Positions 327-39,759 of a stretch of 40,729 bases of DNA are shown in pieces. Position 1 is the stretch's first letter. The number at the start of each line of letters is the position of its first letter. The translations under genes were made by a program, and so were the position numbers. Location: positions 1 through 40,729 of IMG/VR virus record IMGVR_UViG_3300005859_000002; one strand, given 5' to 3'. The notes beneath the pieces were generated by a model. The model had not been told where the DNA came from and made no database searches. It saw only the letters and a program-made list of their open reading frames with translations.

Positions 327-342
327 GAGAAAACTTTATTAA
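327..342 (+). promoter_or_regulatory. Strong BRE-TATA (early-type) promoter
   Basis: GAGAAAACTTTATTAA about 35 nt upstream of ATG 378; same motif recurs before other terminal genes. Confidence 0.8.
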
Positions 343-377
343 GGTTGGAGGATAGAATAGATATTAGGGTTTAAGAT

Positions 378-815
378 ATGTCAGAAGAAAAGGTTCAAAT
401 AAATTCAAATTTGGAAAGGCAAGCTAGACATAAGATTATAACTTTCCCTTATCGTAATACTACTGCGGGTGGAAAAGACGATACACTATTAATTTCTCTT
501 AGAACAGGCAATATAATACCTTCAAATTTGCATTTATCAAGGTCTGGTTCTCATGGAAGTCGAAATTATAAGCTTTTACCAGCGAAATATCTAATGTATA
601 AAGTAAAAAGGAGCAATTTAGGTAACACTTACATAATAGTTTCAATAATTCTGTTAAAAGAAGATGGAGCTATTGAGACTCTTTTCGAATGGAAATTATA
701 TGAGGGTAAGAAAAATAGAATCCTTTTGGGACAGTTGCCTGAGAAGATTGAGCAAATTTTACTTTCAAGTAAAGAGCAACTACCGCTTTTTAATTATATT
801 TATAATTTTGGTTAG
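378..815 (+). CDS. Hypothetical early protein, candidate anti-defence
   Basis: 145-aa ORF with promoter, RBS and long T-rich terminator. Confidence 0.75.
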   Translation: MSEEKVQINSNLERQARHKIITFPYRNTTAGGKDDTLLISLRTGNIIPSNLHLSRSGSHGSRNYKLLPAKYLMYKVKRSNLGNTYIIVSIILLKEDGAIETLFEWKLYEGKKNRILLGQLPEKIEQILLSSKEQLPLFNYIYNFG

Positions 816-816
816 C

Positions 817-910
817 TTTTTTTATTTTATATTTTTTTATTCGTTATATTTTTATTATATTCGTTTTATTAAATCCTCTTTTATTTATTTCATTTTCTAT
901 TTCTATTTAT
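817..910 (+). terminator. Extended oligo-T terminator region
   Basis: Multiple T runs directly after the stop at 815. Confidence 0.6.
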
Positions 911-1025
911 AATTTTTCTCATCTTTCAAATAATTTTGCTATTGTTCTAAGAATTTCATGAAACTAAAAATAAAGATGTTTTTATATTTGTCATAATGAA
1001 TAAGCTACTTTTAGGTTGAAAGGGA

Positions 1026-1349
1026 ATGGTATCGTTATATAAATTACAAGAAGGAGATGATCTGTTAGGAGACATAATAGTAAAGAAACATAGAGATTAT
1101 TTTAGAATTGTATTTACTGATGAATATAACTGTTTATTTACAGATCATCAGGGAAAAGCCTTTAAAATAGAACATATTGATAATAATGGAATTTTTGATA
1201 GTTGTTTTGTTTTTTATCATGAGCTAGGTGTAAAAAATATTGAAGAATTGTTTCTTTTAATAGTAAGAAATCCTAGAGAAATAATAAATCTGCTAACAGG
1301 GAACAATATTCCAGTATATAGACTTATAGTTGAATATTTTCAAGATTAA
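1026..1349 (+). CDS. Hypothetical protein
   Basis: 107 aa; upstream TTTATATTTGTCATAA promoter. Confidence 0.75.
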   Translation: MVSLYKLQEGDDLLGDIIVKKHRDYFRIVFTDEYNCLFTDHQGKAFKIEHIDNNGIFDSCFVFYHELGVKNIEELFLLIVRNPREIINLLTGNNIPVYRLIVEYFQD

Positions 1350-1427
1350 TTTTTTTTGCAATTTTTAAGTTTTAGACATTTTTGATGTTTTATATTTGTC
1401 ATAACTTATATATTCTTTCTGGTAAAA

Positions 1428-1751
1428 ATGGAAATACAAGAAGAGGAATTTATAAAAGATTTACAATTAGATTTTAATATTCAATTATTGAAATTTAAGA
1501 AATATGACGAAATTTATGATAAATTAAAAATAGACATAAAAGATATAAAAAACTCAAATGAAATTAAAACTAAATTCGGAATTATAAGTCCTGAAAAATA
1601 TCAAATTGAAGAAATATTAGACCAGATAGGTTCATATTATAGAACGTATAAAGTTATGTCTAAATATCTAGGAAAAAGTGCAATGAATGAGAAACTTAAA
1701 GAGGAAATATGGTTTTTAATAAGTTTAGTAATTTGGAAATTGTACTATTAG
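1428..1751 (+). CDS. Hypothetical protein
   Basis: 107 aa; upstream TTTATATTTGTCATAA promoter. Confidence 0.75.
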   Translation: MEIQEEEFIKDLQLDFNIQLLKFKKYDEIYDKLKIDIKDIKNSNEIKTKFGIISPEKYQIEEILDQIGSYYRTYKVMSKYLGKSAMNEKLKEEIWFLISLVIWKLYY

Positions 1752-1817
1752 AGTAACTAAAATAAAGGAATTTTTAAGTTTGTCATAAATTGTATGATCT
1801 TTTACATGTGATGAAAA

Positions 1818-2003
1818 ATGGTAAAGTCTTATAATTTAACAGATGAACAAAAAAGAATTTTGAAAAGAATGCATGAAAGAACAGAATATATTGTAAAGAA
1901 TTATAAAGAATATCTAGATGCATTAGCTGAATATGATAAAACTGGAATTTTGAAAATTCATGGGAAAGTTCTTTATGAAAGACGTTATAATAACGAAAAA
2001 TAG
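1818..2003 (+). CDS. Small protein, possible antitoxin mimic
   Basis: 61 aa; TATA-GTCATA promoter, GTGA RBS; IVKNYKEYLDALAE helix. Confidence 0.7.
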   Translation: MVKSYNLTDEQKRILKRMHERTEYIVKNYKEYLDALAEYDKTGILKIHGKVLYERRYNNEK

Positions 2004-2018
2004 AGATCTAAAAAGATA

Positions 2019-2034
2019 GAGAAAACTTTATATA
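2019..2034 (+). promoter_or_regulatory. Strong BRE-TATA (early-type) promoter
   Basis: GAGAAAACTTTATATA upstream of ATG 2070. Confidence 0.8.
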
Positions 2035-2069: not shown

Positions 2070-2240
2070 ATGAAAGAGATAAGAGTTAAAAATACAGTAT
2101 ATGTAATTAATACTGAAGATGAGATGATTGATTTAGTTCATGAGTTGGCTAGAGAGGGCTATACAGTTAAAGAAATAGCACAAATTCTGTCTATTGGCAA
2201 GAGAAAAATAGTTAAAATGCTACAAGATTGTTGGGGATGA
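2070..2240 (+). CDS. HTH protein, SIRV1 ORF55/56a (gp1) family; not in ORF track
   Basis: Hand translation MKEIRVKNTVYVINTEDEMIDLVHELAREGYTVKEIAQILSIGKRKIVKMLQDCWG; matches remembered SIRV gp1 pattern HELAxxGYTVxxIAxxL. Confidence 0.88.
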   Translation: MKEIRVKNTVYVINTEDEMIDLVHELAREGYTVKEIAQILSIGKRKIVKMLQDCWG

Positions 2241-2491
2241 TGAAGATGAGTTTTAAAGAATTAAAAGAAGAAATTATATCTCAACTAGAAAATTATCATC
2301 CTTTAACAGGTGCTGAAACTTTTTATTTACATTATCTTCTTGTAGAAGCTAGAGTTTTAAGAGAGAATGAAATAGAAATTTTTTATAAAGATCTTATCGG
2401 TATAAGTACAGATAATCATATAACATATAACTTTCAAGTTTTTTTAAGAAAAATAGTAAATTTAATAAAAGAAAATTATAGTCTCGAATAA
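2237..2491 (+). CDS. Hypothetical protein (start 2237 or 2246)
   Basis: ATG overlaps the stop of the upstream HTH gene; T-rich terminator follows. Confidence 0.7.
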   Translation: MMKMSFKELKEEIISQLENYHPLTGAETFYLHYLLVEARVLRENEIEIFYKDLIGISTDNHITYNFQVFLRKIVNLIKENYSLE

Positions 2492-2682
2492 ATTTATTTT
2501 TTTTCTGTTTTATTTTTTCTTTTCTAACTTTATTTTCTAGCTTTCTTTTCTTATCAATAATTTTTCTCAAGTATGTTATATTATTTTAAACTATTTAGAA
2601 TTAGGTAAATTTGAAGTGAAGTTATAGAAATTTAGAGAAAACTTTAAAAATGTGTTTTTATAGATTATATATAAGTGATAAA

Positions 2683-2931
2683 ATGAGTTTTGAAGAAAGT
2701 TCAAAAGTTAAGTTAGGAAAAAAAGAAAAAGCTGTTATTTTTTACTTAACGCAAAATTCAGGTTCAGCGTGGCAAGAGGATATAGTAGCGTATTTCTCTT
2801 GGGCTAAAAAATACCAGAGTGTTATTTTGAAAAGATTATACAAGATGCAAGAAAAAGGTCTAATAAAGATTCGGGAGGAAATAAATCCTGATACTGGTAG
2901 GGTCAAGAAGAGGGTTTACTTAATTCAATAA
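2683..2931 (+). CDS. Winged-helix DNA-binding protein, possible Aca-like regulator
   Basis: KRLYKMQEKGLI recognition helix and wing NPDTGRVKKRVYL; start moved to 2683 because the promoter is at 2635-2650 and a GTGA RBS precedes it. Confidence 0.8.
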   Translation: MSFEESSKVKLGKKEKAVIFYLTQNSGSAWQEDIVAYFSWAKKYQSVILKRLYKMQEKGLIKIREEINPDTGRVKKRVYLIQ

Positions 2932-5149: not shown

Positions 5150-5770
5150 TTAAAACAAAGTTCCATAGCATTTTCCTTTAAACTCACAATTTTTGCAGAA
5201 AAACGAATTCGCAATAGGTATAGTTTTATAATCTTCTTTTTTCATATATTCTTTGAAATTTTTTATCCAATCTATCGTTTTTTGCAAATATTCGTCTAAT
5301 ACTTTTTTGCTTATTTGAAATTGTTTAACTTCCCTATTTACTCTATTGAGATATATGATATAGATATTGTCAATTTGATAATTTTGTTGTGATAATAGAT
5401 AGTAATATATTGAAACTTGATATAAGTGATATTCTCTTACATGAAAATAATTGCTTGAAATTGTTTTTAACTCAATTAAGTCGTTTCCGCAAATTAAATC
5501 TATACGACCTGAAATTTTCATACCTTCAATTTCTCCTTTTACTTCAATTTCACTTTTACAATTCAATTTTTCTATAAGATGATTTTCTATTCTTTCATGA
5601 TATTGTTCTCCTAAATCAAGAACTATTTCATTAATTCCTCTTTCAAATTCAAATTTTCTAGCAAAGTAACTTTTTCTATAACAAATTCCAAGTTCACTAG
5701 GGAATATTGTATCTTCTGGATATTTTATTTTGAAACTTTGTTTTACTATTTCTTCATAGTTCATGATCAT
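5150..5770 (-). CDS. cas4: Cas4-like PD-(D/E)xK nuclease (SIRV2 gp19-like)
   Basis: N-terminal CYRK, GRIDL, ELKT, QVSIY, C-terminal [10 protein letters not shown] Fe-S ligands. Confidence 0.93.
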
Positions 5771-11986: not shown

Positions 11987-12286
11987 TTAATGAATTTCAT
12001 TATTGTTTCTTCCACAAATAACTACAATATTAAACATATTCCTATTATATCTCCAATTTGCAGATATATATTGAGGATATCGAAAAGTCTTTATTATATA
12101 TCTTAAAATTCCAATTCCTCTTTTTTCATAAAATTTTATTGATGAATTCATTACAATTTTAATACTTACTATATTATTATCTTCTAAAACTAAATAATCA
12201 TAAAGATTATCAGGATAACGTATTTTTAACCATTTAAATAATTGTATTGTATATTTTCTACATTCGTTAGTCACTAGATTATCCAT
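11987..12286 (-). CDS. Hypothetical protein
   Basis: 99 aa, divergent from the MCP gene; GTCAT motif upstream. Confidence 0.75.
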   Translation of the reverse strand: MDNLVTNECRKYTIQLFKWLKIRYPDNLYDYLVLEDNNIVSIKIVMNSSIKFYEKRGIGILRYIIKTFRYPQYISANWRYNRNMFNIVVICGRNNNEIH

Positions 12287-12522
12287 AATTTAAATATAAA
12301 GAAATGACAACTAAATATTTTTTTCATATTTTTCGCATAGTAGTATAATTATCAATTTATTCTAAGAGTTATATATTTATTCTTAACTCATGATATATAT
12401 AATATTATGAATATGACTTTGTTTCTTAGAAAAAGAGCAATAAGAACAATAAATATACATTATATTTTGAATTAGCCGTGTAAATTTTTAATTACATAAT
12501 TAAAAATAATAATAGAGGAAAA

Positions 12523-12927
12523 ATGGCAAAAGGACACACACCCAGGTCATATAGTCAAAGATATGCTAAATGGAGTGCAAAGTTCACTGCATTTAGTAAT
12601 CCTACCGTCTCTAGCACCATATTAACAAATGTAGCTCCAGTAGCTCAAGAAAATTTCCAAACTAATGTACCTAAATTCACTGCAGTAAGTGAACAAGTAT
12701 CTTCAGTACTTTCAGAATATGGTATCACTGGACCCAATAGAGCAATATACCAAGGCTATGGATTAAAAGTTGCTAGAGCATTAAATAGAGTTGGCGGAGG
12801 ACCCGCATTAGTAAATATGATAAATGGACTAAAGGCATATTATATCTCTGCATTTAACGCTAATCCAACTGTTCTCGATGCAGTGACAAATATAATAACT
12901 GGATCTCCAACTGGATACGTAAGCTAA
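12523..12927 (+). CDS. Major capsid protein (SIRV ORF134)
   Basis: MAKGHTPRSYSQRYAKW...GITGPNRAIYQGYGLKVARALNR...GSPTGYVS. Confidence 0.98.
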   Translation: MAKGHTPRSYSQRYAKWSAKFTAFSNPTVSSTILTNVAPVAQENFQTNVPKFTAVSEQVSSVLSEYGITGPNRAIYQGYGLKVARALNRVGGGPALVNMINGLKAYYISAFNANPTVLDAVTNIITGSPTGYVS

Positions 12928-13074
12928 AACTAAATAGAATATCTTTAAAGCTATTTTATTTTTTTTCTTTTTTTATTCTTAGACTGTTTTTAGAATTCTT
13001 CTATTATAATTTAATAATTAACTAGTTGAAATTAGCAGTTTAAAAAAAATCAATTTTAACTTTTTAGCTTGAAA

Positions 13075-13245
13075 TTAATTACTATCTTCCGATTCAGTTT
13101 CAAGATATTCATATGTTTTAGCACTTATTCTTTTTACATCTCTCATTTTTATATTCGGGTGATGTTTTCTAAGATGATACATTATACTTCTTCTATTTTT
13201 GAATATTTTTTCACATACTGGGCATTCAAATAAAACTAGCCCCAT
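13075..13245 (-). CDS. C2H2 zinc-finger protein; not in ORF track
   Basis: Hand translation MGLVLFECPVCEKIFKNRRSIMYHLRKHHP... (56 aa). Confidence 0.85.
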   Translation of the reverse strand: MGLVLFECPVCEKIFKNRRSIMYHLRKHHPNIKMRDVKRISAKTYEYLETESEDSN

Positions 13246-13281
13246 GATATTTTTTATTTGTCATGACGCTAAAAAATCATT

Positions 13282-14754: not shown

Positions 14755-14757
14755 AAA

Positions 14758-16469: not shown

Positions 16470-16618
16470 AAATATAATTTCTCAGTTTGAAGATAAAAAC
16501 AAATCACGCCTAACATGATATATACATAATATAATGTATATCACTGTGTTAGTTAGAACGATAAACATGATAGAAAGATTTATATATTTCGAAATCGAGT
16601 TATATATAGGCGAAAAAG

Positions 16619-16807
16619 ATGAGATGTAGAAAACAAAGCTCAAAGAAAAATTCAAGAAAAGAAATCGACGTAGAGAACGATCCGTTATTTAGAAGAGCTT
16701 TCCTTGACGACCCTGAATACAGGGCAGTTTTAGTGAAGATGAAAGTAAAGGAAGACAAAGATATGGAAAAAGTTACAGATGAGCTAGCAAAGCTCTTTCA
16801 AGAGTGA
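16619..16807 (+). CDS. Small protein under early-type promoter
   Basis: GAAAGATTTATATA at about 16573-16586, GGCGA RBS, T-rich terminator. Confidence 0.65.
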   Translation: MRCRKQSSKKNSRKEIDVENDPLFRRAFLDDPEYRAVLVKMKVKEDKDMEKVTDELAKLFQE

Positions 16808-25525: not shown

Positions 25526-25556
25526 ATAAATTTGTCATATTTACTAGTTTCTACTC

Positions 25557-26372: not shown

Positions 26373-26398
26373 GTATAATCAAAAATGGCGATTAAAAC

Positions 26399-26722: not shown

Positions 26723-26801
26723 AGAATTAGAACACATGATATACATTATATAATATATGAGAATTGTACATTTATTTTTGTCATCTTACTAATTCTTTCA
26801 T

Positions 26802-28574: not shown

Positions 28575-28701
28575 TTCATCTAGTAAGATATAATATTTCT
28601 AGCAAAGTTACAAATTAGTACATTTTTTAAGTTGATAATACAAAAATTATGAAAAAAGCTTTAAACTATTTATTTGGAAATAAGCACATAATGAGCTAAA
28701 A

Positions 28702-29670
28702 ATGCCAGATATTATTGAAACACAACCCCAACTCTACTGCAAATCAATTTACCAAATTGCTAATTTATTAGCTCCTCCATCAAAATATTCTGTAATATCT
28801 TCAAAATTATGGAACGAAATTGTACAAGATTTATATCTAACATATAATGTTTTCGAATACATTAATTATTTAACACAATATCAGTATTTAAGAATTATAC
28901 CTTCAATAATTAATATATTTTATAATTCTGACCAATTCTTTAAACCGTACGAATTTACTTCAATTTTATATGCAAAAAAAGGAATATCGCTAACTGTAGA
29001 TGATTTTAATAAACTTATTGACGCAATTATAGAATTAGCTAATAAAAATAATATAAAATTGCAAAAAAGACTTTCTCATGTACAGCATGACCAAATTGTA
29101 AAATCTGAACAATTTTCAGATATAGTTTATGATATTAACCAATTCATAACTTTCAATTATAACCAATACTTTTTATTAGATTGTAATGGATATAAATTTA
29201 GTAACTTATTAAACTCCATAAAAACATTTTTAACTGTTTTGATTAATGAACTTAAAACAAGTATAACAGTTCTTACAAATACATATATTAAAAATTTTTT
29301 AATTAATAATAATAATCAAACAATTAATATATTTGGTTCAATAGATAAATTTTTAATCAATAAAAATTATGAGATAATTACAATAGATGATAATGCTTCT
29401 ATAAATATATTAAAAGTTGGCGTTAATACTTTGATAATTACAATTAATAATAACGCTTATATAAATACATTACATGTTGAAGTAAATTTTGGAAGTATTA
29501 TAATTAATAATAACTCTAACATAAACACATTAAGAATTAACGATAATGCAGATACAATTCAAATTAACGATAATGTAACAATTAAAAACTTTATTTGTGG
29601 TATAAATACTGGAAATGTAATTATTTCACCGAATGCAAAAATTATAAATAATCAATGTACTAAATCATAA
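28702..29670 (+). CDS. Protein with C-terminal beta-solenoid repeats (ORF309-like)
   Basis: About 20-aa Ile/Asn repeats such as INTLHVEVNFGSIIINNNSN. Confidence 0.75.
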   Translation: MPDIIETQPQLYCKSIYQIANLLAPPSKYSVISSKLWNEIVQDLYLTYNVFEYINYLTQYQYLRIIPSIINIFYNSDQFFKPYEFTSILYAKKGISLTVDDFNKLIDAIIELANKNNIKLQKRLSHVQHDQIVKSEQFSDIVYDINQFITFNYNQYFLLDCNGYKFSNLLNSIKTFLTVLINELKTSITVLTNTYIKNFLINNNNQTINIFGSIDKFLINKNYEIITIDDNASINILKVGVNTLIITINNNAYINTLHVEVNFGSIIINNNSNINTLRINDNADTIQINDNVTIKNFICGINTGNVIISPNAKIINNQCTKS

Positions 29671-30141
29671 ATGACAAAAAACAAATTCTCTATTATCTTC
29701 AGATATGAAAGTTAAAATTGTTCCGTAGAGTTTCTTCATCAATTGGAATCTATTTTCAGTCCAGTCATGAATTGCTATACAATATTGTTTATATTTTTGC
29801 AATTGTGAAACATCTAGATTTTTTTCACAGCCCTCACAGTCCATTATAAAAATATCTGTATTTGGATATATATTTCCTGACCATTCTCCATTAATCTCAA
29901 CTTTATCGCAAATATTAAATTCTTTACAAACTTTTTCTTTGAATTTCTTATTAAGTTCATCACTTTTTTCATAACCTATAATTTTTTTAGCACCTTTTAG
30001 CAAAAAGTATAAAGCTGAACTTCCACAGTCATTTCCAATAATTGTAATTGTTTTATCTTTTACTTCTAATTTTCCATAAGCCTGATCGAATTCATGCCAA
30101 TAACAACATTCCATTTTACAGAAATATTCTTTATAATTCAT
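29665..30141 (-). CDS. SAM-dependent methyltransferase (FkbM-like, SIRV ORF158-like)
   Basis: IIGNDCGSSALYF, IIGYE, MDCEGCE. Confidence 0.85.
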   Translation of the reverse strand: MNYKEYFCKMECCYWHEFDQAYGKLEVKDKTITIIGNDCGSSALYFLLKGAKKIIGYEKSDELNKKFKEKVCKEFNICDKVEINGEWSGNIYPNTDIFIMDCEGCEKNLDVSQLQKYKQYCIAIHDWTENRFQLMKKLYGTILTFISEDNREFVFCHL

Positions 30142-30149
30142 AATTTCAC

Positions 30150-31103
30150 CTAACTATTAATAATTTCAAACAATGCATAAACTTGACATTTTCCAGTTGC
30201 CCATGCATAAACATTTTTAGGATTATTAACATGAATTTCTAGCGAATCATTTGGCAAAATTGGAAAATTGTTATAAAGATTATTCCCAATATAGATGATA
30301 TAATTACTTAAATTCTGTAAAATTATTCTAACAGTTTCTAACGTTGAACCTGAATAAAGTGGAGCTGGTGTAGTTGAAACATCAAGCTGTAGACCTTGAA
30401 TTGTCGGCGGAGATAAATACAAACCTAATTTATTAATTGTATTAGCTAAACCTACAGTTGCTAAATATACATATGTAAGTGCATATTCGATAGAACCTGC
30501 AACAAAATAAATAGCATCTTGTATAGAAATTCCTAATCTTTTAGATATAGAATCTATTAATTCATAAAATGAAGTATAGAAATTTTGCAAATCTTCTTTT
30601 ATTATAGTTCTAGACTCTTCAACATTTGAAATTAAGTAATTTACAACATTATAAATTGTTTCGTATAAAGCTTCAGTATCTTTTGAAAGAATCGAGGTAA
30701 CAGTAGGTACTGCTACTATAATTTTCTGATAAATTTCTTCAGGTAATTGAGTAATTGAATAATATAATTGTTCATTTGAATTTATAATATCGTAAATTTG
30801 TTGTTGTGCAGTAGAAATAAATGCAGAGATATAAATTGGATCTTCTTCAGTTAGTACTGGCTGACCTGAAACATATACATCATTAGCAAAATTCCCTTGT
30901 AATGCGAAAATATTATTAGGAATGTATAAATTTCCATTTTTTAGAATTGAAGTAACTGCATTTCCACCAGTTTCATATAATTGAATTAAAAGAAGATTCG
31001 CTGTGTTCCACATTGCAGATGTTAATCTTTGGAAAGGTGAAGCTAATAATTCTGAAATAGATGTATAATTAACGCTCACATCATTTTTATCTAAATACGA
31101 CAT
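30150..31103 (-). CDS. Conserved rudiviral protein (ORF269-like)
   Basis: 317 aa; LLASPFQRLTSAMWN; synteny. Confidence 0.75.
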   Translation of the reverse strand: MSYLDKNDVSVNYTSISELLASPFQRLTSAMWNTANLLLIQLYETGGNAVTSILKNGNLYIPNNIFALQGNFANDVYVSGQPVLTEEDPIYISAFISTAQQQIYDIINSNEQLYYSITQLPEEIYQKIIVAVPTVTSILSKDTEALYETIYNVVNYLISNVEESRTIIKEDLQNFYTSFYELIDSISKRLGISIQDAIYFVAGSIEYALTYVYLATVGLANTINKLGLYLSPPTIQGLQLDVSTTPAPLYSGSTLETVRIILQNLSNYIIYIGNNLYNNFPILPNDSLEIHVNNPKNVYAWATGKCQVYALFEIINS

Positions 31104-31210
31104 AAAAAACTATTCTCAACTTATATGTCATATTATGTATATTATGTGTTCTAATTGTTCTCCTAATGAGTAAATATAACTAATATTTGTCATAATTTCA
31201 GAATAATGTT

Positions 31211-31816
31211 ATGAAAGTCTTCACATTTGCAGGATTTACAAAACATTTACTTGAACTGGATTTTGATTACGTTGTAGTCTATAAAACATTTAATGATTTA
31301 ACTCCTGAATTAAACGAAAAATTTGCAAATAAGATAATTTGGAATGAAACTAAGAGTAATATAAGATGGATAAGAATTGCAAAACAACTGTTAAAAATTC
31401 TAGATGTAGCAAAAAATGAAAATGATGACAAATTTGCAATTATAGACAGTGACTTAATAGTTCCAAAAATTAGAGAAGTAGACCCTCAAAATAGAATATT
31501 ATCATTATGTTATTGGCTTTATTACGATTGGGCAAATGAGATTAGACCATTTTGTTCAGGAACAAATTACATATTCAATAAAAAACATATTCCAGTTTTA
31601 GAAACTATATTAAACTTATACATAGAAAAAGAATATTATAAAGAATTTCCAGTTGATATATTTCTACATGATCATATTTCTCATTTGAACATATTGAAAC
31701 TTGGAACTATTCATTATATAAAAAATCCAGAGGGAGAAAAGAAAATGGAATTTAAATTTGAAGACATATCTAAAGTGTTTAAGCATATTCCTGAATTTGT
31801 TTTAATTAGCTGGTGA
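31211..31816 (+). CDS. GT-A-like glycosyltransferase
   Basis: IIDSD (DxD) motif; adjacent to a GT4 gene. Confidence 0.7.
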   Translation: MKVFTFAGFTKHLLELDFDYVVVYKTFNDLTPELNEKFANKIIWNETKSNIRWIRIAKQLLKILDVAKNENDDKFAIIDSDLIVPKIREVDPQNRILSLCYWLYYDWANEIRPFCSGTNYIFNKKHIPVLETILNLYIEKEYYKEFPVDIFLHDHISHLNILKLGTIHYIKNPEGEKKMEFKFEDISKVFKHIPEFVLISW

Positions 31817-31823
31817 GATCAAA

Positions 31824-32888
31824 ATGCAGAAACCAATTTATTACGTTTATCCACAACATCATGATGTTTCATTCAAATTCGTAGCTAGAGAACATATAAA
31901 AATGCTAAAAGAAAAATATTTAGTTTATGAAATTCCTGCTTTATCATTTTATCAATTTACGCCTTTTAGAAACCCAATATCAATAATTCATCCCTTCTTT
32001 TATTCAATGTGGAAATGGACAAACGTGGAATTTTCATTTTTTAAAAAATATAGATCAAAAGTTAGCGAAATAATTGGAGTTGAAGTAGCTGATTCTGACA
32101 AAATTTCCGAAAAATTCGTAGATTATGCTAATAACCTAGCTGATAAAATAATTGTAAATTCGGAATGGTCAAAAAACGCGTTTAAAAATTCTGGATTAAA
32201 AATTCCAATTTATAAAGTTGTACATAATTTTAATGAAAGACTTCTAGCTGATGATAATGAACTAAAAGTTGATGATCAACTTAAATATATTGAAAAAGTC
32301 AAGAAAGAGAAGAAAATTAAGCTAATAATGATATCTCTTTGGCATTCAGATTTTCGAAAAGGAGCTGATATTTTTCACGTAATAGCAAAAGAAATTCAAA
32401 AAGAAAGAGATGATATTTATTTTCTAGTAAAAAGTGGCGGAGCTAGAACAGATTTTAAAGATATAAAAATGTTCAACTTAACAGGAAATACTGATTTTGA
32501 TAATATAATAAAAATGTATAGAATTTCAGATTTGTATTTATTAACTTCAAGAGGCGGAAGTTTTGAATTAAACGGTTTAGAAGCGTTCGTTTCCAAAATT
32601 CCAACGATTGCGACAAAAGACGGTGCATGGGAAGAATATTTTCCAAATGAGTTAAAAGATTTACTAGTTGAACCTTGTGATCGTCCAACTGTTCTTCCAA
32701 ATAATTCAATACATATCGGTCAAGGAGTTCAAATGTGTATAAATGAAGCAGTTGAGAAAATACTAAATGTCCTAGATAATTATGACAAATATAAATCTAA
32801 AATTGAAGAGTATTACAACTTCTGGATTGAAAATTTCAGTTATGAAAGTGTTAAAAAACAACTTTTTAATGCTTTAGAATCAAGCTAA
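31824..32888 (+). CDS. GT-B (GT4) glycosyltransferase
   Basis: RKGAD and TSRGGSFELNGLEA. Confidence 0.92.
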   Translation: MQKPIYYVYPQHHDVSFKFVAREHIKMLKEKYLVYEIPALSFYQFTPFRNPISIIHPFFYSMWKWTNVEFSFFKKYRSKVSEIIGVEVADSDKISEKFVDYANNLADKIIVNSEWSKNAFKNSGLKIPIYKVVHNFNERLLADDNELKVDDQLKYIEKVKKEKKIKLIMISLWHSDFRKGADIFHVIAKEIQKERDDIYFLVKSGGARTDFKDIKMFNLTGNTDFDNIIKMYRISDLYLLTSRGGSFELNGLEAFVSKIPTIATKDGAWEEYFPNELKDLLVEPCDRPTVLPNNSIHIGQGVQMCINEAVEKILNVLDNYDKYKSKIEEYYNFWIENFSYESVKKQLFNALESS

Positions 32889-34768: not shown

Positions 34769-35661
34769 TGAAGCTAATATTCGGCGTTAATACGTCCAAT
34801 AGTTATCTCTTTAAAACTAAATTTCCAGTTTTAATAAATCAACTAAAATTAAAAGAAATAAAATGGAGAAATGAAACTTGGGTTGATAGTGGCGGGTTTC
34901 AAATAATTTCACATAATCTAAAGATTTCTGTAGATGATGTTCTAAAAAAGTATAAAAATGTTAGTGCTTATGCATTTTTTTCGCTCGATATTCCTAGTGT
35001 TTTTTCGTCAATAGATAAAAGAAATTTCGAATATTTTGAGTATCTCTATACAAAAATAGAATCAATTGAGAAAATCATACCTGTACTTCATATTTATCCT
35101 ATAAAAGATCTAGATGAAGCTATAGATTTCTATAAACAATATAGTTATTATTTCGCAATTGGTGCAATAATGACTTCTAGTAAATTGAAAGTTTTGAAAT
35201 ATGCAATTCCGTGGATTTATTATGTAAAAAAGAAAGTTCCGTATCTTCATGTTCTAGGCATGTCTTCTCCATATTTTTTGCAGATTTTTAACAATATGCA
35301 AAGTATGGATACTGCAATTTGTTCAACAATTTCTTCTTTCAAAGAAATAATTTGGTTTGACGCTTCTAGAAGATACGTCGGAAATATGAAAACTCCGAGA
35401 GAAAGATATAGAATAAAAAAAGAAGAAGCAGAAGAACTTTTCAAATTTTTAGATAAGAATAACTTCCTATTCGAATATAACTTAGAAGATAGTAAAATTT
35501 TAGAAATGATAAATGCGTATATGTTACTATATAATAACTGGAGAATTGAAAATAAGTATACAGAATACGCAGAGAGAATAAGAAGAATGAGTTTAGACAG
35601 ACTAACGATAGAACTAATAAGAAATTATAAAATCGGGAAAGAAATATTATTAAAAAAGTGA
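34768..35661 (+). CDS. tRNA-guanine transglycosylase / DpdA-like protein
   Basis: VDSGGFQ, SLDIP, LHVLG, SMDT; TAATG overlap with the permease. Confidence 0.85.
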   Translation: MKLIFGVNTSNSYLFKTKFPVLINQLKLKEIKWRNETWVDSGGFQIISHNLKISVDDVLKKYKNVSAYAFFSLDIPSVFSSIDKRNFEYFEYLYTKIESIEKIIPVLHIYPIKDLDEAIDFYKQYSYYFAIGAIMTSSKLKVLKYAIPWIYYVKKKVPYLHVLGMSSPYFLQIFNNMQSMDTAICSTISSFKEIIWFDASRRYVGNMKTPRERYRIKKEEAEELFKFLDKNNFLFEYNLEDSKILEMINAYMLLYNNWRIENKYTEYAERIRRMSLDRLTIELIRNYKIGKEILLKK

Positions 35662-35693
35662 TAAAAATTATCGATAAAAAAAGAAAGAAAAAT

Positions 35694-36518
35694 TTAGTCT
35701 GCTGTCTCAGTCCTGGGTCTTCTGTGACTGAACAGATACAGTTCTTTAGACGCTAAACTTACTGTCATCTCTTCATGATCAGGCGAAAATAACTTTGTCT
35801 GCACTGATTCATAGTTTTGATTATAAATAAGTTGTGCGTTTCCGCCAAACACATTTATATCGAATTTTATAACTTCTTTGTTAAAATTTACTGTATGATT
35901 GTATATATATATATCAGTAACTTTTTCAAAATGCAAGGCTTTAGGTAACTTAGGAATCCAGCTTACGTAAAGATGTCCCTGCTGAGCCTCTAATGGGAAT
36001 TTCAATATCTTCCCCTTGATAAATTTGTTAAATATTGATACATTATAATTGTCATAACTTATTAATATCTCCTGTTTATTCGGATCTATCTCTAAATTCT
36101 GCGTTATTTCAGAATCTTGCAATAACTGCCCTAACATTATTTGTTTAACTAGCCAGTCTATCCCATTAAGACTTCTAGTCATCTTTCTCGTAGAATTTAT
36201 AGATAATATCGGATTAGTAGTGACACGATAAATGCCCCTTGCATCTTTTAATTCGCCGTTTTTATACTGCATACAACCTTGGAATGTCATGCTTGATCTC
36301 GAAACGTATTGGGAGCAGTTAATATAATTATTATCTAAAGCAATTTTAACATAGCTGTAACCGTCGATAAAAACCTTAGGTAATTGAGTAAACACGTGTT
36401 CTGTAGTAGCAGTTATATGCCTTGCATACATCGAATTAAATATTTCCTCTTCCTGACTTAACTTACTTTCTTCTTGACTTGAAATTTCTTGAACTTGACT
36501 TTCTTTTTCTTCTGACAT
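35694..36518 (-). CDS. acrIIIB1: Anti-CRISPR AcrIIIB1 homologue (SIRV2 gp48-like)
   Basis: ALDNNYINC...SRSSMTFQGC, FPLEAQQGHL, IYNH, SPDH, LFSHRRPR correspond to remembered AcrIIIB1 motifs. Confidence 0.82.
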   Translation of the reverse strand: MSEEKESQVQEISSQEESKLSQEEEIFNSMYARHITATTEHVFTQLPKVFIDGYSYVKIALDNNYINCSQYVSRSSMTFQGCMQYKNGELKDARGIYRVTTNPILSINSTRKMTRSLNGIDWLVKQIMLGQLLQDSEITQNLEIDPNKQEILISYDNYNVSIFNKFIKGKILKFPLEAQQGHLYVSWIPKLPKALHFEKVTDIYIYNHTVNFNKEVIKFDINVFGGNAQLIYNQNYESVQTKLFSPDHEEMTVSLASKELYLFSHRRPRTETAD

Positions 36519-36553
36519 ATCTAAACCCCTAATATCTATTCTATAAGAACGAG

Positions 36554-36569
36554 TTAATAAAGTTTTCTT
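36554..36569 (-). promoter_or_regulatory. Strong BRE-TATA (early-type) promoter of the acrIIIB1 homologue
   Basis: AAGAAAACTTTATTAA on the minus strand. Confidence 0.8.
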
Positions 36570-36605
36570 TATCTTTTTAGATCTCTACCTATCGTTATCT
36601 TTACG

Positions 36606-37127: not shown

Positions 37128-37278
37128 AATGCCTCGATTTTTATTTTTTTGTATGACATATTTATGCTCCTTTCATTAAATATAGTCAATGAAATTTTAA
37201 AACAGAATTGAGAAAAATAATCAATAGAAATAGAAAATAGAAACTAGAAAATAAAAAAATGGAAATAATAGAAAAAAA

Positions 37279-37584
37279 TTATTGTTTTTTAGCTTCTAAG
37301 TAGAGCTTTATTGCGTATTTAATTAGATCCAATCCATAAAAATCTTTCTCTGTATCAACTTCAGCACTTTTTTCATCATGATCGAAGACGTATCTCAATT
37401 TAAATTCATTATCATAAACTAAAAAAATATCAACAACCTTATATCCAACATCTTCAAAATCGTCGTCATCATCATAAACAAATCCCGCATCTTCCAATTC
37501 TTTTGGTGTTAAAGAGACTAAAAAAACGGATCCTTTTTCTTTTGCTTCTCTCAAGAGTTTTTCTACCTCTTCTTCTATGCCCAT
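37279..37584 (-). CDS. Highly acidic early protein, candidate Acr/DNA mimic
   Basis: About 28 of 101 residues D/E; GAGAAAACTTTAAATA promoter at 37620-37635. Confidence 0.75.
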   Translation of the reverse strand: MGIEEEVEKLLREAKEKGSVFLVSLTPKELEDAGFVYDDDDDFEDVGYKVVDIFLVYDNEFKLRYVFDHDEKSAEVDTEKDFYGLDLIKYAIKLYLEAKKQ

Positions 37585-37759
37585 TTTTCTTACCTTATCC
37601 TAACCTCTTTAGCTATTACTATTTAAAGTTTTCTCTAAACTTTTAGATATCTAACCTTTTATCTTTTATTTGGTTTAAACTAGAAATATTAAAACAGTTT
37701 TGAGAAAAATTATCAATAATCTAAGCCAAAAATACAAATAAAAAATAAAAAAATAAAAC

Positions 37760-37972
37760 TTAATCAGGTGTGAAAATTCTTAAAAAATATTGGTTTAAAA
37801 AAAGCTTTTTCTCTTTATGTAGAGATACTAAAATATATTCTTTTTTTGTCACAAAATAATAAGACTTCTCATCGATAACGTAAAATGTTTTAAAATCAGA
37901 ACTGTTTTTAAAAAAGGACAAAAGTTCCATAAACTTATTTTTATTTATTCTAATTGTAACTTCCTCTTTCAT
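37760..37972 (-). CDS. Small early protein
   Basis: GAGAAAGTTTTAAATA promoter at 38004-38019. Confidence 0.65.
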   Translation of the reverse strand: MKEEVTIRINKNKFMELLSFFKNSSDFKTFYVIDEKSYYFVTKKEYILVSLHKEKKLFLNQYFLRIFTPD

Positions 37973-38145
37973 CTTGCGTCATTATTACTCTTATCCTCAT
38001 CGCTATTTAAAACTTTCTCTATTTCTTTATCTCTCTATCTCTCGTTCTTTCTACCGATGAACCTTCAAAAAACCCGTCATCTGTCACATGAAAATCTACA
38101 AAAAACTTTATATATCTAAATCTCTAAAACATAATTAGATGTTAT

Positions 38146-38505
38146 ATGAGTGGAGAAGAGATAGAGAAAAGATGGAATTTAATAGGAGTAATAATTAAAA
38201 ATTTAACAAGAAATCAAATAAAAACGCTATTAACACAAATATTTGAAATTGATGAAATGCCTAACGTCATCGCAGTAAACAGAAAAAGCAGGAAAATAGA
38301 AGGTTTCGTGATGCTAAAGAAAAAAATGCTGAGATACGAAATACAATTTTTTGCGTTAGAACCTATAGATGAAATCATAGTATCATTAGGACAAGGTTAT
38401 TTGAAAATACAATTAATAGAAAAGATAGTAATTGAAGAAAAAGGAAATTGTATTGAAGTTTATTTGAAAAACAATAAGCAATATCTTTTTAGCGTATTTT
38501 TATAA
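38146..38505 (+). CDS. Hypothetical protein
   Basis: 119 aa; AAAAACTTTATATA promoter at about 38101. Confidence 0.7.
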   Translation: MSGEEIEKRWNLIGVIIKNLTRNQIKTLLTQIFEIDEMPNVIAVNRKSRKIEGFVMLKKKMLRYEIQFFALEPIDEIIVSLGQGYLKIQLIEKIVIEEKGNCIEVYLKNNKQYLFSVFL

Positions 38506-38728
38506 CCCTGAAGCTATTTTCTTTTTTTTATTCCTCATTTTTCTCAACTTCTAAATAATTTTTCATAACTTTTTCTATCTCTTCATCTTTCTAACGCTTA
38601 GAATCAGCCTTAGAAATTCCTCTATATCTTCAAATTCTATAACATTCCTGATAAAAATAATTGATGAAAATAGAAACAGAAAATAAAAAATAATAAAATA
38701 AAAAGAAAAACTAAAAAAATAAGGAAAA

Positions 38729-39025
38729 TTAACTTTGAGATGACAATAATAAATAAACAGAAAAGAAATCATAAATATTCAAAACAGATTTCTGCTTTAT
38801 CTTAGAAATTTCATCAAAATTACTAATCCTGCTAAATCCGATAAAAGAAGTTATGGACATGCTCTCCCAGTGGAAATGCTCACAGCTATTCCTTAACCCG
38901 TATCTGCCATCGCTGTCAGTAACCAGCAATAGCTGATTATCTAATGGGCAGTAGAAATATCTACTACCATCCATCTCCTCAATTCTTAACTGATCTTTTA
39001 TTTGATTTAATTCTATTGCAACCAT
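38729..39025 (-). CDS. Small early protein with CEHFH motif
   Basis: GAGAAAGATTTATATA promoter at 39060-39075; YFYCPLD...CEHFHW. Confidence 0.75.
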   Translation of the reverse strand: MVAIELNQIKDQLRIEEMDGSRYFYCPLDNQLLLVTDSDGRYGLRNSCEHFHWESMSITSFIGFSRISNFDEISKIKQKSVLNIYDFFSVYLLLSSQS

Positions 39026-39223
39026 TTCTTTTCCCTGATATATCGTCTGTCATAACAGATATATAAATCTTTCTCTATTCTTTTATCTTTCTATTTCACG
39101 CTATTTTTAACGTTTAGAACTAGCCTTAGAATTTTATATTCGAATAGAAATATTATAACATCACTGAAAAAAATTACCAATAACCCTACAAAAAATTAAT
39201 TTAAAAAAATAAAAATAAAAAAA

Positions 39224-39424
39224 TTAGACAAATGAAGAAATTTCTAAATAATAGATTCCGTCAAAATTATAAATTGTGATTTTTGTTCCGCCTATCTTAT
39301 CACTAAAACTGTAATATCCATTTGTCTCAGAACTTTTTTCAAAAAAATTTGAATTTCCCTGAAACTGGTTTAAAAGTTCTTTAAATTGTTTTTCTGAAAT
39401 TTTTATTGCTATATAGTGACTCAT
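39224..39424 (-). CDS. Small early protein inside the ITR
   Basis: GAGAAAGATTTATTAA promoter at 39456-39471, GAGGT RBS. Confidence 0.72.
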   Translation of the reverse strand: MSHYIAIKISEKQFKELLNQFQGNSNFFEKSSETNGYYSFSDKIGGTKITIYNFDGIYYLEISSFV

Positions 39425-39759
39425 TTTACCTCATTATCATCTCTATCTTCAAGCATTAATAAATCTTTCTCTATTCTTTTATCTCTCTATCTCTCTACTT
39501 TTTTATCTTTATTTTTCATTTTTTATCTCTCGACATATTTTTCTCTTAGCTGTAATAATAACTCAAGATAGAAGCAAAAAACTAGAAACGGACCTGCAGC
39601 AGAAACTATTTTTCTAAAACGGACCTAACAAAATTCCTAGCTGAACGGTGAAAAGTTCTAAAAATATATAATTCAAACTAAGTCCTATATTATAAATTAT
39701 AACTAGTAACTATCTAGTTGCTATATTATAATATACAATATACTAACTAGTAGTTACAT

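What the first reader, a model, noticed from the sequence alone, without database searches (positions are those of the whole stretch)
327..39471. About ten small genes share one strong promoter with the acrIIIB1 homologue: an anti-defence regulon
Seen: a GAGAAA(A/G)(C/A/T)TTTAWWWA-like motif sits about 30-35 nt upstream of starts at 378, 2070, 2683, 16619, 38146 (+) and 36518, 37584, 37972, 39025, 39424 (-). It differs from the TATA-GTCATA promoters of core genes. Established: rudiviral Acr genes are immediate-early and conserved strong promoters have been used to predict anti-defence genes. Inference: the uncharacterised members are new anti-defence candidates.
Basis: partly seen in the sequence, partly recalled or inferred. 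Interest (0 to 1): 0.7.

Follow-up and report, generated by a model that had tools for sequence, protein, structure and literature searches.

The report
Rudivirus early anti-defence promoter set
Ten genes near the ends of this uncultivated archaeal rod-shaped virus genome share one strong host-type promoter, the same one already published in 2024 as the marker of early anti-defence genes in related viruses, so the pattern is real but largely already explained.

Summary
Seven of the ten sites match it exactly, two have one mismatch and one has two (9 hits at ≤1 mismatch against 1.65 expected). A matrix built only from SIRV2 early promoters scores eight window sites at 19-34 bits (best shuffle 16.4). 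Sites 16561 and 38089 are marginal on score.

The motif is a purine-rich BRE plus TATA box. It ends 31-35 nt before each ATG. Nine of the ten sites lie at the genome termini. It never overlaps the TATA-GTCATA class, which precedes 27 other genes.

The window is IMG/VR contig 3300005859_000002, a new relative of the Usarudiviruses. The architecture is the Aca8-linked early regulatory sequence of Bhoobalan-Chitty et al. 2024, who analysed all cultured relatives this way.

Gene 36518 is a true AcrIIIB1 homologue. Seven other members fall in published families ADG.02, .07, .10 (two copies), .11, .20 and .21. Only ORF 16619 and the 84-aa gene co-transcribed with aca8 are new.

Early timing and anti-defence activity remain untested.

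New here: a conserved terminator-like element follows every early unit.

The parts
317..342 (+). Early promoter (extended BRE + TATA) of gene 378
   Evidence: 30.9 bits with the window matrix and 23.3 bits with the independent SIRV2 matrix. TATA end to ATG is 35 nt.
378..815 (+). 145-aa protein, ADG.11 family (SBRV1 gp53-like)
   Evidence: tblastn gives 45.5% identity to SBRV1 gp53 (E 3e-28) and 38% to SFV1 and SBFV1. gp53 is listed as ADG.11 'ADG/Acr'. AF2 model has pLDDT 89 and is a beta-sandwich plus C-terminal helices. Best informative PDB match is AFV1 ORF157, 3ii2, TM 0.45, E 1e-4.
2009..2034 (+). Early promoter of the aca8 operon
   Evidence: 32.3 bits with both matrices.
2070..2240 (+). 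Aca8 homologue, a 56-aa HTH protein and the predicted repressor of the regulon
   Evidence: 41-51% identity to the C-terminal 55 aa of SIRV2 gp01/gp54, SIRV8 gp09 and SIRV10 gp04. Weak Pfam HTH matches. PHROG 7067, E 7e-21.
2237..2491 (+). 84-aa gene overlapping the aca8 stop by 4 nt (co-transcribed); a new candidate family
   Evidence: No match in 50,697 phage records. Only 2 representative clusters in 1.84 billion proteins. The same promoter-aca8-homologue order occurs in L026-L028 and L016. Four-helix bundle, pLDDT 95, with no informative PDB match.
2625..2650 (+). Early promoter of gene 2683
   Evidence: 28.3 bits and 21.9 bits.
2683..2931 (+). 82-aa winged-helix protein, ADG.02 family (MarR-like)
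   Evidence: 52% identity to SIRV8 gp11, which is listed as ADG.02 'putative transcriptional regulator (MarR)'. PHROG 9113, E 1e-27. Pfam DUF7343, E 1e-4.
16561..16586 (+). Weak, variant early-type promoter in mid-genome
   Evidence: 18.4 bits but only 12.7 bits with the independent matrix, which is within shuffle range. Aligns with the weak site before SIRV8 gp35, an ADG.04 gene.
16619..16807 (+). 62-aa orphan ORF; gene status uncertain
   Evidence: No phage match. The only IMG/VR hit is the same virus at 99.2% identity. The promoter and first codons align with the SIRV8 gp35 locus but the ORF body does not. The cassette is absent from SIRV10 and SIRV2.
35694..36518 (-). AcrIIIB1 homologue, 274 aa, with an acidic 45-aa N-terminal extension
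   Evidence: tblastn: SIRV2 gp48 31.9% over 254 aa (E 1e-34 to 3e-35), SIRV8 gp56 36%, SIRV10 gp45 36%. PHROG 6092, E 3e-54. SIRV8 gp56 is listed as AcrIIIB1.
36554..36579 (-). Early promoter of the acrIIIB1 homologue
   Evidence: 26.7 bits and 19.4 bits. The BRE reads AAGAAA, one mismatch.
37279..37584 (-). 101-aa acidic protein, ADG.07 family
   Evidence: 37-44% identity to SIRV10 gp01 and SIRV8 gp06, both listed as ADG.07. All 4 homologues found carry the early promoter.
37620..37645 (-). Early promoter of gene 37584
   Evidence: 31.5 bits and 32.3 bits.
37760..37972 (-). 70-aa protein, probable diverged paralogue of the ADG.10 gene at 39224
   Evidence: Pairwise BLASTP E 3e-4 over the N-terminal 43 aa. 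DNA repeat 37681-37789 against 39145-39253 at 71%. No phage match.
38004..38029 (-). Early promoter of gene 37972, back-to-back with the next entry
   Evidence: 26.3 bits and 27.8 bits.
38089..38114 (+). Weak variant promoter of gene 38146
   Evidence: 22.8 bits but 11.2 bits with the independent matrix. The same divergent arrangement and the same deviant BRE occur before SIRV8 gp59.
38146..38505 (+). 119-aa protein, ADG.21 family
   Evidence: 34% identity to SIRV8 gp59, listed as ADG.21. PHROG 28348, E 3e-15.
38729..39025 (-). 98-aa Cys/His-containing protein, weak ADG.20 relative
   Evidence: 31.6% identity over 96% of its length to OM401714 32224-32505, E 7e-3. That ORF is listed as ADG.20.
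39060..39085 (-). Early promoter of gene 39025
   Evidence: 31.4 bits and 33.6 bits.
39224..39424 (-). 66-aa protein, ADG.10 family; a second, truncated inverted copy ends at window bases 1-24
   Evidence: 42% identity to SIRV8 gp01, listed as ADG.10. Left-end inverted repeat 1-160 against 39088-39247 at 84%.
39456..39481 (-). Early promoter of gene 39424
   Evidence: 29.8 bits and 24.6 bits.
908..921 (+). Conserved 3' terminator-like element (ATAATTTTTCTCA type) after gene 378. Equivalent copies: 2556-2569, 2986-2999, 16855-16868, 38533-38546 (+); 35659-35672, 37209-37222, 37701-37714, 38649-38662, 39165-39178 (-)
   Evidence: ATTTTTMTCA occurs 15 times against 2.8 expected. A copy lies 8-96 nt after the stop of every early unit on the same strand. 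The element is conserved in SIRV2, SIRV8 and SIRV10.

Best explanation
The ten sites are copies of the early regulatory sequence of Aca8-encoding rudiviruses. Each is a near-optimal archaeal core promoter: a purine-rich TFB-recognition element (TAGAGAAAR) directly upstream of a TATA box (TTTAWWWA). Conserved flanks surround it: TAAAAG upstream, and an A(T/C)AGA box about 10-15 nt downstream.

The proposed mechanism runs as follows. Host TBP, TFB and RNA polymerase should recognise these sites without any viral factor, so transcription starts as soon as the genome enters the cell. The predicted transcripts have a 9-13 nt leader with a G-rich Shine-Dalgarno-like box. They encode one small protein each, or two for the aca8 operon. 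They end at a conserved TTTTTCT-containing element.

The products are an AcrIIIB1 homologue, seven proteins of published predicted anti-defence families, one orphan, and the HTH protein Aca8. Aca8 sits behind the same promoter. It is predicted to shut the whole set off, itself included, once it accumulates.

Shown here: the motif, its exclusivity, its geometry, its terminal location, the homologies, and conservation of the same motif before homologous and non-homologous genes in other rudiviruses.

Inferred from SIRV2 data and the literature: promoter strength, immediate-early timing, repression by Aca8, and anti-defence activity of members other than the AcrIIIB1 homologue.
For: Motif statistics and exclusivity.

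Conservation is concentrated in the core. Mean pairwise identity is 70% at -20..+8, against 38-42% in the flanks.

There are two non-overlapping promoter classes, and the early class is terminal.

An AcrIIIB1 homologue and an Aca8 homologue both sit behind the motif.

The window-derived matrix recovers 11 sites in SIRV2, before gp01/54, 02/53, 03, 05, 07, 08, 47, 48 and 52. This matches the '11 of 13 early genes' of the paper. It also recovers the listed ADG promoters in SIRV8 and SIRV10 and in 12 IMG/VR loci that encode Aca8 (paper).

Promoter class is mostly conserved within a family: Aca8 19 of 21 early, ADG.07 4 of 4, ADG.02 6 of 9, whereas the 36606 family is 12 of 13 GTCAT type.

ADG.11 homologues in unrelated viral contigs also carry a strong BRE/TATA at the same distance from the ATG.

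The published framework, SIRV2 early expression and the strong-BRE claim come from PMC11065993.
Against: There are no expression data for this virus, which is an uncultivated metagenomic genome.

Two of the ten sites (16561, 38089) are not significant on score with the independent matrix. The ORF behind 16561 has no homologue.

Part of the similarity is recent common descent rather than selection. 352-391 against 36505-36544 is 95% identical, the genes at 37760 and 39224 are paralogues, and the left end is an inverted copy of the right end.

Aca8 binding to these sequences is only predicted in the literature; I found no published binding experiment.

Only AcrIIIB1 among the families present has experimental support. 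Most ADG families are untested predictions.
Confidence: 0.8

Rival explanations
1. This is a generic strong promoter and not a dedicated regulon. The shared sequence is simply the optimum for host TBP and TFB. Unrelated highly expressed genes converge on it, and no common viral regulator or common function exists.
For: The core is the canonical BRE plus TATA. The paper itself notes that the same promoter sequence drives host cren7 and the type I-A cas genes. ADG.11 homologues in unrelated contigs have the strong BRE/TATA with entirely different flanks.
Against: Conservation extends beyond BRE/TATA, to the upstream TAAAAG and the downstream A(T/C)AGA box. The highly expressed major capsid gene (12523) lacks the motif. 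An Aca8 homologue is itself behind the motif in 19 of 21 loci. Members cluster at the termini.
Confidence: 0.1
2. The pattern is a duplication artefact. The copies are alike because terminal segments, including the inverted terminal repeat, were recently duplicated and shuffled. On this view the motif reflects ancestry and not function.
For: The left end 1-160 is an inverted copy of 39088-39247. 150-212 is 100% identical to 38520-38582. 352-391 is 95% identical to 36505-36544. The genes at 37760 and 39224 are paralogues whose promoters were duplicated with them.
Against: Flanks outside the core have decayed to 38-42% identity while the core stays at 70%. The same 26-nt sequence is kept in Icelandic, US and Japanese viruses before non-homologous genes. 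Most window members are unrelated proteins.
Confidence: 0.05
3. It is an early regulon, but mainly for host takeover and regulation rather than anti-defence. Members would be early transcription factors or cell-cycle and metabolic modulators, and 'anti-defence' would hold only for the AcrIIIB1 homologue.
For: Two of the ten members are HTH or winged-helix proteins. ADG families are predictions, with few validated. The ADG.11-like model resembles a viral nuclease-class fold, AFV1 ORF157 (the nuclease assignment is from my own memory of the literature).
Against: In SIRV2 such early accessory genes are dispensable in a CRISPR-deficient host. An early HTH protein, SIRV2 gp47 (AcrIA3), is itself an anti-CRISPR that acts on the host cas promoter. 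The families are patchy and fast-evolving, as expected of counter-defence genes.
Confidence: 0.25

Closest known systems
Aca8-associated early regulatory sequence and ADG regulon of Rudiviridae (Bhoobalan-Chitty et al., Nat Commun 2024, PMC11065993)
   Same: The BRE plus TATA core is the same, almost base for base: the window-derived and SIRV2-derived matrices cross-detect each other's sites. The motif also precedes small single genes at both genome termini. It includes acrIIIB1 and aca8. Aca8 is itself behind the motif. Most members fall in that paper's ADG families.
   Different: This genome (IMG/VR 3300005859_000002, about 79% identical to SIRV11 and SIRV4 over about 55% of the core region 12000-32000) was not in that study. 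The box 10-15 nt downstream of the TATA reads A(T/C)AGA here, where most relatives have ACATA(T/A)G. No AcrID1 homologue was found among the terminal ORFs. aca8 heads a two-gene operon with an unlisted 84-aa family.
SIRV8, SIRV9 and SIRV10 (Usarudivirus) terminal gene sets
   Same: They share ADG.10, ADG.07, the gp07-like 173-aa gene, Aca8, ADG.02, ADG.21, AcrIIIB1 and ADG.17, with partly conserved order. They also share the divergent promoter pair before ADG.21 and a mid-genome early-type site after the gp34 homologue.
   Different: Cassettes are swapped. ADG.11, ADG.20 and the second ADG.10-like gene are here, in place of SIRV8 gp02-gp04. The 1428 family carries the early promoter in SIRV8 and SIRV10 but the GTCATA promoter here.
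Bacterial phage acr-aca operons
   Same: A small HTH protein is encoded with anti-defence genes behind a strong promoter that it is expected to repress (the analogy is drawn in PMC11065993).
   Different: Here there is no single operon. About ten dispersed single-gene units share the promoter. aca8 is the first gene of its unit, not the last. The promoter is archaeal BRE/TATA, not sigma-70.
GTC-type rudiviral promoters (Kessler et al. 2004, cited in PMC5569661)
   Same: Both use a host-type TATA box. The window shows the known virus-specific GTC element immediately downstream of the TATA in 27 genes.
   Different: The ten early sites lack GTC and have the strong purine BRE. They sit 39-43 nt (TTTA to ATG) from the start, which predicts a short leader. 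GTCAT lies mostly 22-36 nt from the ATG, which predicts leaderless or near-leaderless mRNAs.

Membership tests
Aca8-type early/ADG regulatory sequence (PMC11065993) | Purine-rich BRE directly upstream of a TTTAWATA TATA box, shared by several single genes of one genome | tested here: met
   9 hits against 1.65 expected. Eight sites score 19-34 bits with a matrix built from SIRV2 early promoters only.
Aca8-type early/ADG regulatory sequence (PMC11065993) | Conserved regulatory sequence around the core promoter within the same genome | tested here: met
   The core -20..+8 is 70% identical on average, against 38-42% in the flanks. There is an upstream TAAAAG and a downstream A(T/C)AGA box.
Aca8-type early/ADG regulatory sequence (PMC11065993) | An aca8 gene is present and is itself preceded by the motif | tested here: met
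   Gene 2070-2240 is 41-51% identical to Aca8 of SIRV2, SIRV8 and SIRV10. Its promoter at 2009-2034 is among the best-scoring sites.
Aca8-type early/ADG regulatory sequence (PMC11065993) | Members cluster at the ends of the linear genome and are small, mostly uncharacterised genes | tested here: met
   Nine of ten are terminal (Fisher p = 3e-7). Median length is 98 aa.
Aca8-type early/ADG regulatory sequence (PMC11065993) | MEME p-value or RSAT e-value below 1e-8 against the virus-specific matrix (the paper's formal cut-off) | not tested
   MEME and RSAT were not available, so log-odds matrices with shuffles were used instead. Sites 16561 and 38089 would probably fail such a cut-off.
Aca8-type early/ADG regulatory sequence (PMC11065993) | Transcription immediately after infection, followed by shut-off | not testable with these tools
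   This is known only for SIRV2 (Quax 2013, as re-analysed in PMC11065993).
AcrIIIB1 (SIRV2 gp48) | Full-length sequence homology to SIRV2 gp48 | tested here: met
   31.9% identity over 254 aa (E about 1e-35). 36% identity to SIRV8 gp56, which is listed as AcrIIIB1. PHROG 6092, E 3e-54.
AcrIIIB1 (SIRV2 gp48) | Inhibits type III-B (and I-A) CRISPR interference | not testable with these tools
   Activity is reported for SIRV2 gp48 only. No solved structure has detectable sequence similarity.
Aca8 | HTH protein of about 55 aa homologous to the C-terminal part of SIRV2 gp01/gp54 | tested here: met
   Alignment A1 has 14 invariant columns and 41-51% identity. There are weak Pfam HTH matches.
Aca8 | Binds the regulatory sequence and represses the early genes | not testable with these tools
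   This is only predicted in the literature I could find.
Bacterial-type acr-aca operon | acr gene(s) followed by aca in one autoregulated operon | tested here: not met
   aca8 is the first gene of a two-gene unit (2070-2491). The other members are separate transcription units on both strands.

The most novel reading that the evidence does not exclude
The early genes are modular cassettes with conserved boundaries on both sides. The 5' boundary is the promoter with its leader. The 3' boundary is an element of about 14-35 nt (ATAATTTTTCTCA, then about 6 nt, then AAATAnTAnTTCTAA). The shared flanks may act as homology handles that let co-infecting rudiviruses swap anti-defence cargo, giving an integron-like gene pool without an integrase.

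In addition, the 84-aa four-helix protein co-transcribed with aca8 would be a new Aca8-linked anti-defence family.
Probability: 0.2. Interest if true: 0.5.

Novelty: new member of a known kind. Interest (0 to 1): 0.25.

Why it matters
The result shows that the published promoter-based method carries over unchanged to an uncultivated rudivirus from IMG/VR. It gives a ranked gene list for that virus:
- one AcrIIIB1 homologue;
- one Aca8;
- seven members of published but untested ADG families;
- two unlisted candidates: the 84-aa aca8 partner, which is credible because the operon is conserved in four other contigs, and ORF 16619, which is doubtful.

It also warns that a motif-only list is incomplete. 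The homologue of the Phd-like antitoxin family ADG.17 uses the late-type promoter here, and so does a gene family that is 'early' in SIRV8 and SIRV10.

The conserved 3' element and the promoter-and-leader swaps between unrelated genes are small additions to what is known. They could bear on how these gene sets are shuffled.

Tried and rejected
1. AcrIIIB1 relation of gene 378. The shared MSEEK start suggested that 378 is a truncated AcrIIIB1 paralogue. This was rejected: BLASTP finds no similarity beyond the first five codons. Only the promoter, leader and first codons are shared, at 95% over 40 nt.

2. ORF 16619 as a diverged ADG.04. This is not supported at protein level (E 0.2). Only the promoter and first codons align with the SIRV8 locus.

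3. A dyad-symmetric operator in the motif. AAAGTTT...AAACTTT is present at two or three sites only and is not consistent across sites (read), so the idea was dropped.

4. 21714-22004 as an AcrIII-1 (DUF1874) homologue in the Hjc operon. There is no Pfam support.

5. Single-protein scans of IMG/VR with the AcrIIIB1 and Aca8 homologues returned only the window itself. An alignment query was needed.

6. A literature search for 'Aca8' alone returned plant calcium-pump papers.

7. The promoter-class tally for AcrIIIB1 homologues is unreliable. The window protein's 45-aa extension shifts the inferred start sites, so I did not use it.

8. Fold searches. The 84-aa protein gave only generic helical bundles. 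The ADG.11-like protein gave a modest match to AFV1 ORF157, which I treat as a lead only.

Full report
WHAT THE WINDOW IS

The window has 24-29% G+C. It encodes a Sulfolobus rod-virus coat protein (Pfam Sulf_coat_C, E 3e-75). Its nearest records are the Yellowstone Usarudiviruses SIRV11, SIRV4, SIRV10, SIRV8 and others, at about 79% identity over 31-56% of the core region 12000-32000.

It is the whole of IMG/VR contig IMGVR_UViG_3300005859_000002. The same virus occurs at 99.2% identity in a second metagenome. It is therefore an uncultivated rudivirus that is not among the genomes analysed in the literature cited below.

THE OBSERVATION

All ten sites are present at the stated positions. At up to one mismatch there are 9 hits against 1.65 expected, and no shuffle reached 9.

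It is about 26 nt, TAAAAGnnTAGAGAAARnTTTAWWWA. Two further elements follow it: an A(T/C)AGA box 10-15 nt downstream, and a G-rich Shine-Dalgarno-like box 6-11 nt before the ATG.

Mean pairwise identity is 70% in the core, against 38-42% in the 50-nt flanks.

A matrix built from the ten sites finds nothing else in the window above 10 bits, but that test is circular. The independent test uses a matrix built only from SIRV2 sites. Eight window sites score 19.4-33.6 bits, while the best of 25 shuffles reached 16.4. Sites 16561 and 38089 score 12.7 and 11.2, which chance can reach. Those two are kept only because of their distance to an ATG and because SIRV8 has equally weak sites at the syntenic places, before gp35 and gp59.

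THE TWO PROMOTER CLASSES

I made a simple gene call of 66 ORFs. In it, 27 genes have a TATA box immediately followed by (T)GTCAT(A). These include terminal genes 1026, 1428, 1818 and 36606. No gene has both motif types. The GTC element downstream of the TATA box is a known rudiviral feature (Kessler 2004, as cited in PMC5569661).

Early-type genes are terminal: 9 terminal against 0 in the core by a strict regex, Fisher p = 3e-7.

Geometry also differs between the classes:
- In the early class, TTTA lies 39-43 nt before the ATG. Assuming the usual TATA position at about -26/-27 (established knowledge), this predicts a 9-13 nt leader.
- In the other class, GTCAT lies mostly 22-36 nt before the ATG. 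This predicts little or no leader.

WHAT THE GENES ARE

| Gene | Identification |
|---|---|
| 35694-36518 (-) | AcrIIIB1 homologue; 31.9% identity to SIRV2 gp48 over 254 aa, 36% to SIRV8 gp56; PHROG 6092, E 3e-54 |
| 2070-2240 | Aca8, the 55-aa HTH form of SIRV2 gp01/gp54; 41-51% identity |
| 2683-2931 | ADG.02, MarR-like winged helix |
| 37279-37584 (-) | ADG.07 |
| 39224-39424 (-) | ADG.10 |
| 38146-38505 | ADG.21 |
| 378-815 | ADG.11; SBRV1 gp53, 45.5% identity |
| 38729-39025 (-) | Weak ADG.20 relative; E 7e-3 |
| 37760-37972 (-) | Probable diverged paralogue of 39224 |
| 16619-16807 | Orphan |

The ADG family names are those of Supplementary Data 1 of PMC11065993.

An eleventh gene belongs to the set. 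ORF 2237-2491 (84 aa) overlaps the aca8 stop codon by 4 nt. It has no match in phage records and only two representative clusters in 1.84 billion proteins. The order early promoter, aca8, homologue, 3' element recurs in contigs L026-L028 and L016. Its model is a confident four-helix bundle (pLDDT 95) with no informative structural neighbour.

The ADG.11-like protein models confidently (pLDDT 89) as a beta-sandwich with C-terminal helices. It gives a modest match to AFV1 ORF157 (3ii2, TM 0.45, E 1e-4).

COMPARISON WITH WHAT IS KNOWN

Bhoobalan-Chitty et al. 2024 (PMC11065993) reported that 11 of 13 SIRV2 early genes share a regulatory sequence. These genes include aca8, acrID1 and acrIIIB1. The sequence has a purine-rich BRE and a TTTAWATA box. 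They used virus-specific versions of it to predict anti-defence genes in all Aca8-encoding rudiviruses. They also proposed that Aca8 represses the set.

The window-derived matrix recovers exactly such sites in other genomes:
- SIRV2: 11 sites, before gp01/54, 02/53, 03, 05, 07, 08, 47, 48 and 52.
- SIRV8 and SIRV10: before the listed ADGs.
- 12 IMG/VR loci that encode Aca8.

The finding is therefore a correct rediscovery of a published architecture in a genome that paper did not include.

Differences seen here:
- The post-TATA box reads A(T/C)AGA, where most relatives have ACATA(T/A)G. I suggest, without a test, that this may go with the only 36-53% identity of this Aca8 to all others.
- None of the window's terminal ORFs matched SIRV2, whose termini carry the AcrID1-family genes, other than the Aca8 and AcrIIIB1 homologues and an ITR ORF.
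- aca8 heads a two-gene operon.

MECHANISM

The best-supported model is host TBP/TFB-driven, factor-independent immediate-early transcription from near-optimal promoters. The transcripts would be short-leadered monocistronic mRNAs. Aca8 would then shut the set off, itself included. My confidence in this architecture is about 0.8.

Everything about timing, strength and repression is inferred from SIRV2 and from analogy with bacterial Aca proteins. I found no published Aca8 binding experiment.

The anti-defence role is experimentally grounded only for the AcrIIIB1 family. HTH members need not be mere regulators: SIRV2 gp47 (AcrIA3) is an early HTH protein that blocks induction of the host cas promoter. 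ADG.02 could act similarly, which is my inference.

RIVAL EXPLANATIONS

- Generic strong promoter with no dedicated regulon. The flank conservation, the Aca8 linkage and the absence of the motif before the capsid gene argue against it.
- Pure duplication artefact. The decayed flanks and conservation across continents before non-homologous genes argue against it. Some copies are nevertheless recent duplicates.
- Early regulon devoted mainly to host takeover. This is not excluded.

WHAT THE MOTIF LIST MISSES

ORF 1818-2003 is 59-72% identical to members of ADG.17, the Phd-like viral antitoxin family validated with SMV1 gp44. Here, and in 4 of 5 relatives, it has the GTCATA promoter.

The 1428-1751 family has the early promoter in SIRV8, SIRV10 and L010, but GTCATA here.

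ADDITIONAL OBSERVATIONS

1. Every early unit is followed, 8-96 nt after its stop and on the same strand, by an element of the type ATAATTTTTCTCA.
   - ATTTTTMTCA occurs 15 times against 2.8 expected (coordinates).
   - It is often followed by AAATAnTAnTTCTAA.
   - It is conserved in SIRV2, SIRV8 and SIRV10.
   - Across four genomes it follows 26 of 34 early genes against 20 of 196 others. Several of those 'others' are misclassified early units.
   - It contains the Sulfolobus TTTTTYT termination signal (my own knowledge). A terminator is therefore the simplest reading.
   - Caveat: single-gene units need terminators and operon-internal genes do not.

2. Promoter, leader and the first five codons are 95% identical between the unrelated genes 378 and acrIIIB1.

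3. The mid-genome site shares its promoter and first codons with the SIRV8 gp35 locus, but not the ORF body. The cassette is absent from SIRV10 and SIRV2.

4. The contig starts inside an inverted second copy of the ADG.10 gene: bases 1-24 read the same seven C-terminal residues plus stop. The left terminus is therefore truncated, and an eleventh promoter copy probably lies beyond it.

Together these observations suggest cassette-wise shuffling with conserved 5' and 3' boundaries. This is speculative; I put it at about 0.2.

VERDICT

Novelty: a new member of a known kind. Interest: about 0.25.

Noticed in passing
window 1-212 vs 38520-39247: The left contig end is an inverted, patchy copy of the right-end region (1-160 is 84% identical to 39088-39247, and 150-212 is 100% identical to 38520-38582). 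Bases 1-24 read the last seven codons plus stop of a second copy of the ADG.10 gene. The contig is therefore truncated inside the inverted terminal repeat, and a further promoter copy probably lies beyond it.
   Followed up: partly
window 352-391 vs 36505-36544: The promoter-proximal box, 5' leader and first five codons (MSEEK) are 95% identical between two unrelated genes, the ADG.11-like gene at 378 and the acrIIIB1 homologue. This looks like a promoter and leader swap by recombination.
   Followed up: yes
window 908-921, 2556-2569, 2986-2999, 16855-16868, 38533-38546 (+); 35659-35672, 37209-37222, 37701-37714, 38649-38662, 39165-39178 (-): A conserved terminator-like 3' element (ATAATTTTTCTCA type, containing TTTTTCT) follows every early transcription unit. 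It is also conserved after early genes in SIRV2, SIRV8 and SIRV10. Conservation extends beyond a plain T-run.
   Followed up: partly
window 1818-2003 (+): This is a homologue (59-72% identity) of the ADG.17 Phd-like viral antitoxin family, whose member SMV1 gp44 was shown to neutralise a host Doc toxin. Here it sits behind a GTCATA-type promoter, not the early motif, so a motif-based list misses it. It is also about 76% identical at DNA level to ATSV and SMV3.
   Followed up: partly
window 1428-1751 (+): This gene family switches promoter class between genomes. It has GTCATA here and in L014 and L015, and the early motif in SIRV8 gp58, SIRV10 gp46 and L010.
   Followed up: partly
window 2070-2491; L026 285-706; L016 453-886: There is a conserved two-gene operon of aca8 followed by an 81-91-aa four-helix-bundle protein. 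The family is very rare, with 2 representative clusters in 1.84 billion proteins.
   Followed up: yes
window 16470-17101: The mid-genome cassette (weak early-type promoter, 62-aa ORF, 3' element) is absent from SIRV10 and SIRV2. It is followed by two direct repeats (16898-16991 and 17008-17101, 77% identical) that look like decayed copies of the promoter region.
   Followed up: partly
window 38004-38114: Two promoters lie back to back in a 173-nt divergent intergenic region (genes 37972 on - and 38146 on +). The same arrangement, with the same deviant BRE on the + side, is conserved in SIRV8 (gp58 and gp59).
   Followed up: partly
window 40459-40690: About 25 tandem copies of an 8-nt unit (AGGAATTT and variants) lie at the right terminus. 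Further repeats with a period of about 95 nt lie at 39988-40254.
   Followed up: no
window 378-815 (+): The AlphaFold model of the ADG.11-like protein (pLDDT 89) gives its best informative PDB match to AFV1 ORF157 (3ii2, TM 0.45, E 1e-4). Homologues in unrelated viral contigs (L023-L025) also carry a strong BRE/TATA promoter, with different flanks.
   Followed up: partly
window 5150-5770 (-): A Cas4-like PD-(D/E)XK nuclease (Pfam PDDEXK_1, E 1e-9; Cas_Cas4, E 3e-6) lies in the conserved core, as in SIRV8 gp14.
   Followed up: no
L029 (IMGVR_UViG_3300025462_000009): The same virus, at 99.2% identity over 4.1 kb, is present in a second metagenome. A second, different Aca8-encoding rudivirus contig (L018) comes from the same metagenome as the window.
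   Followed up: no
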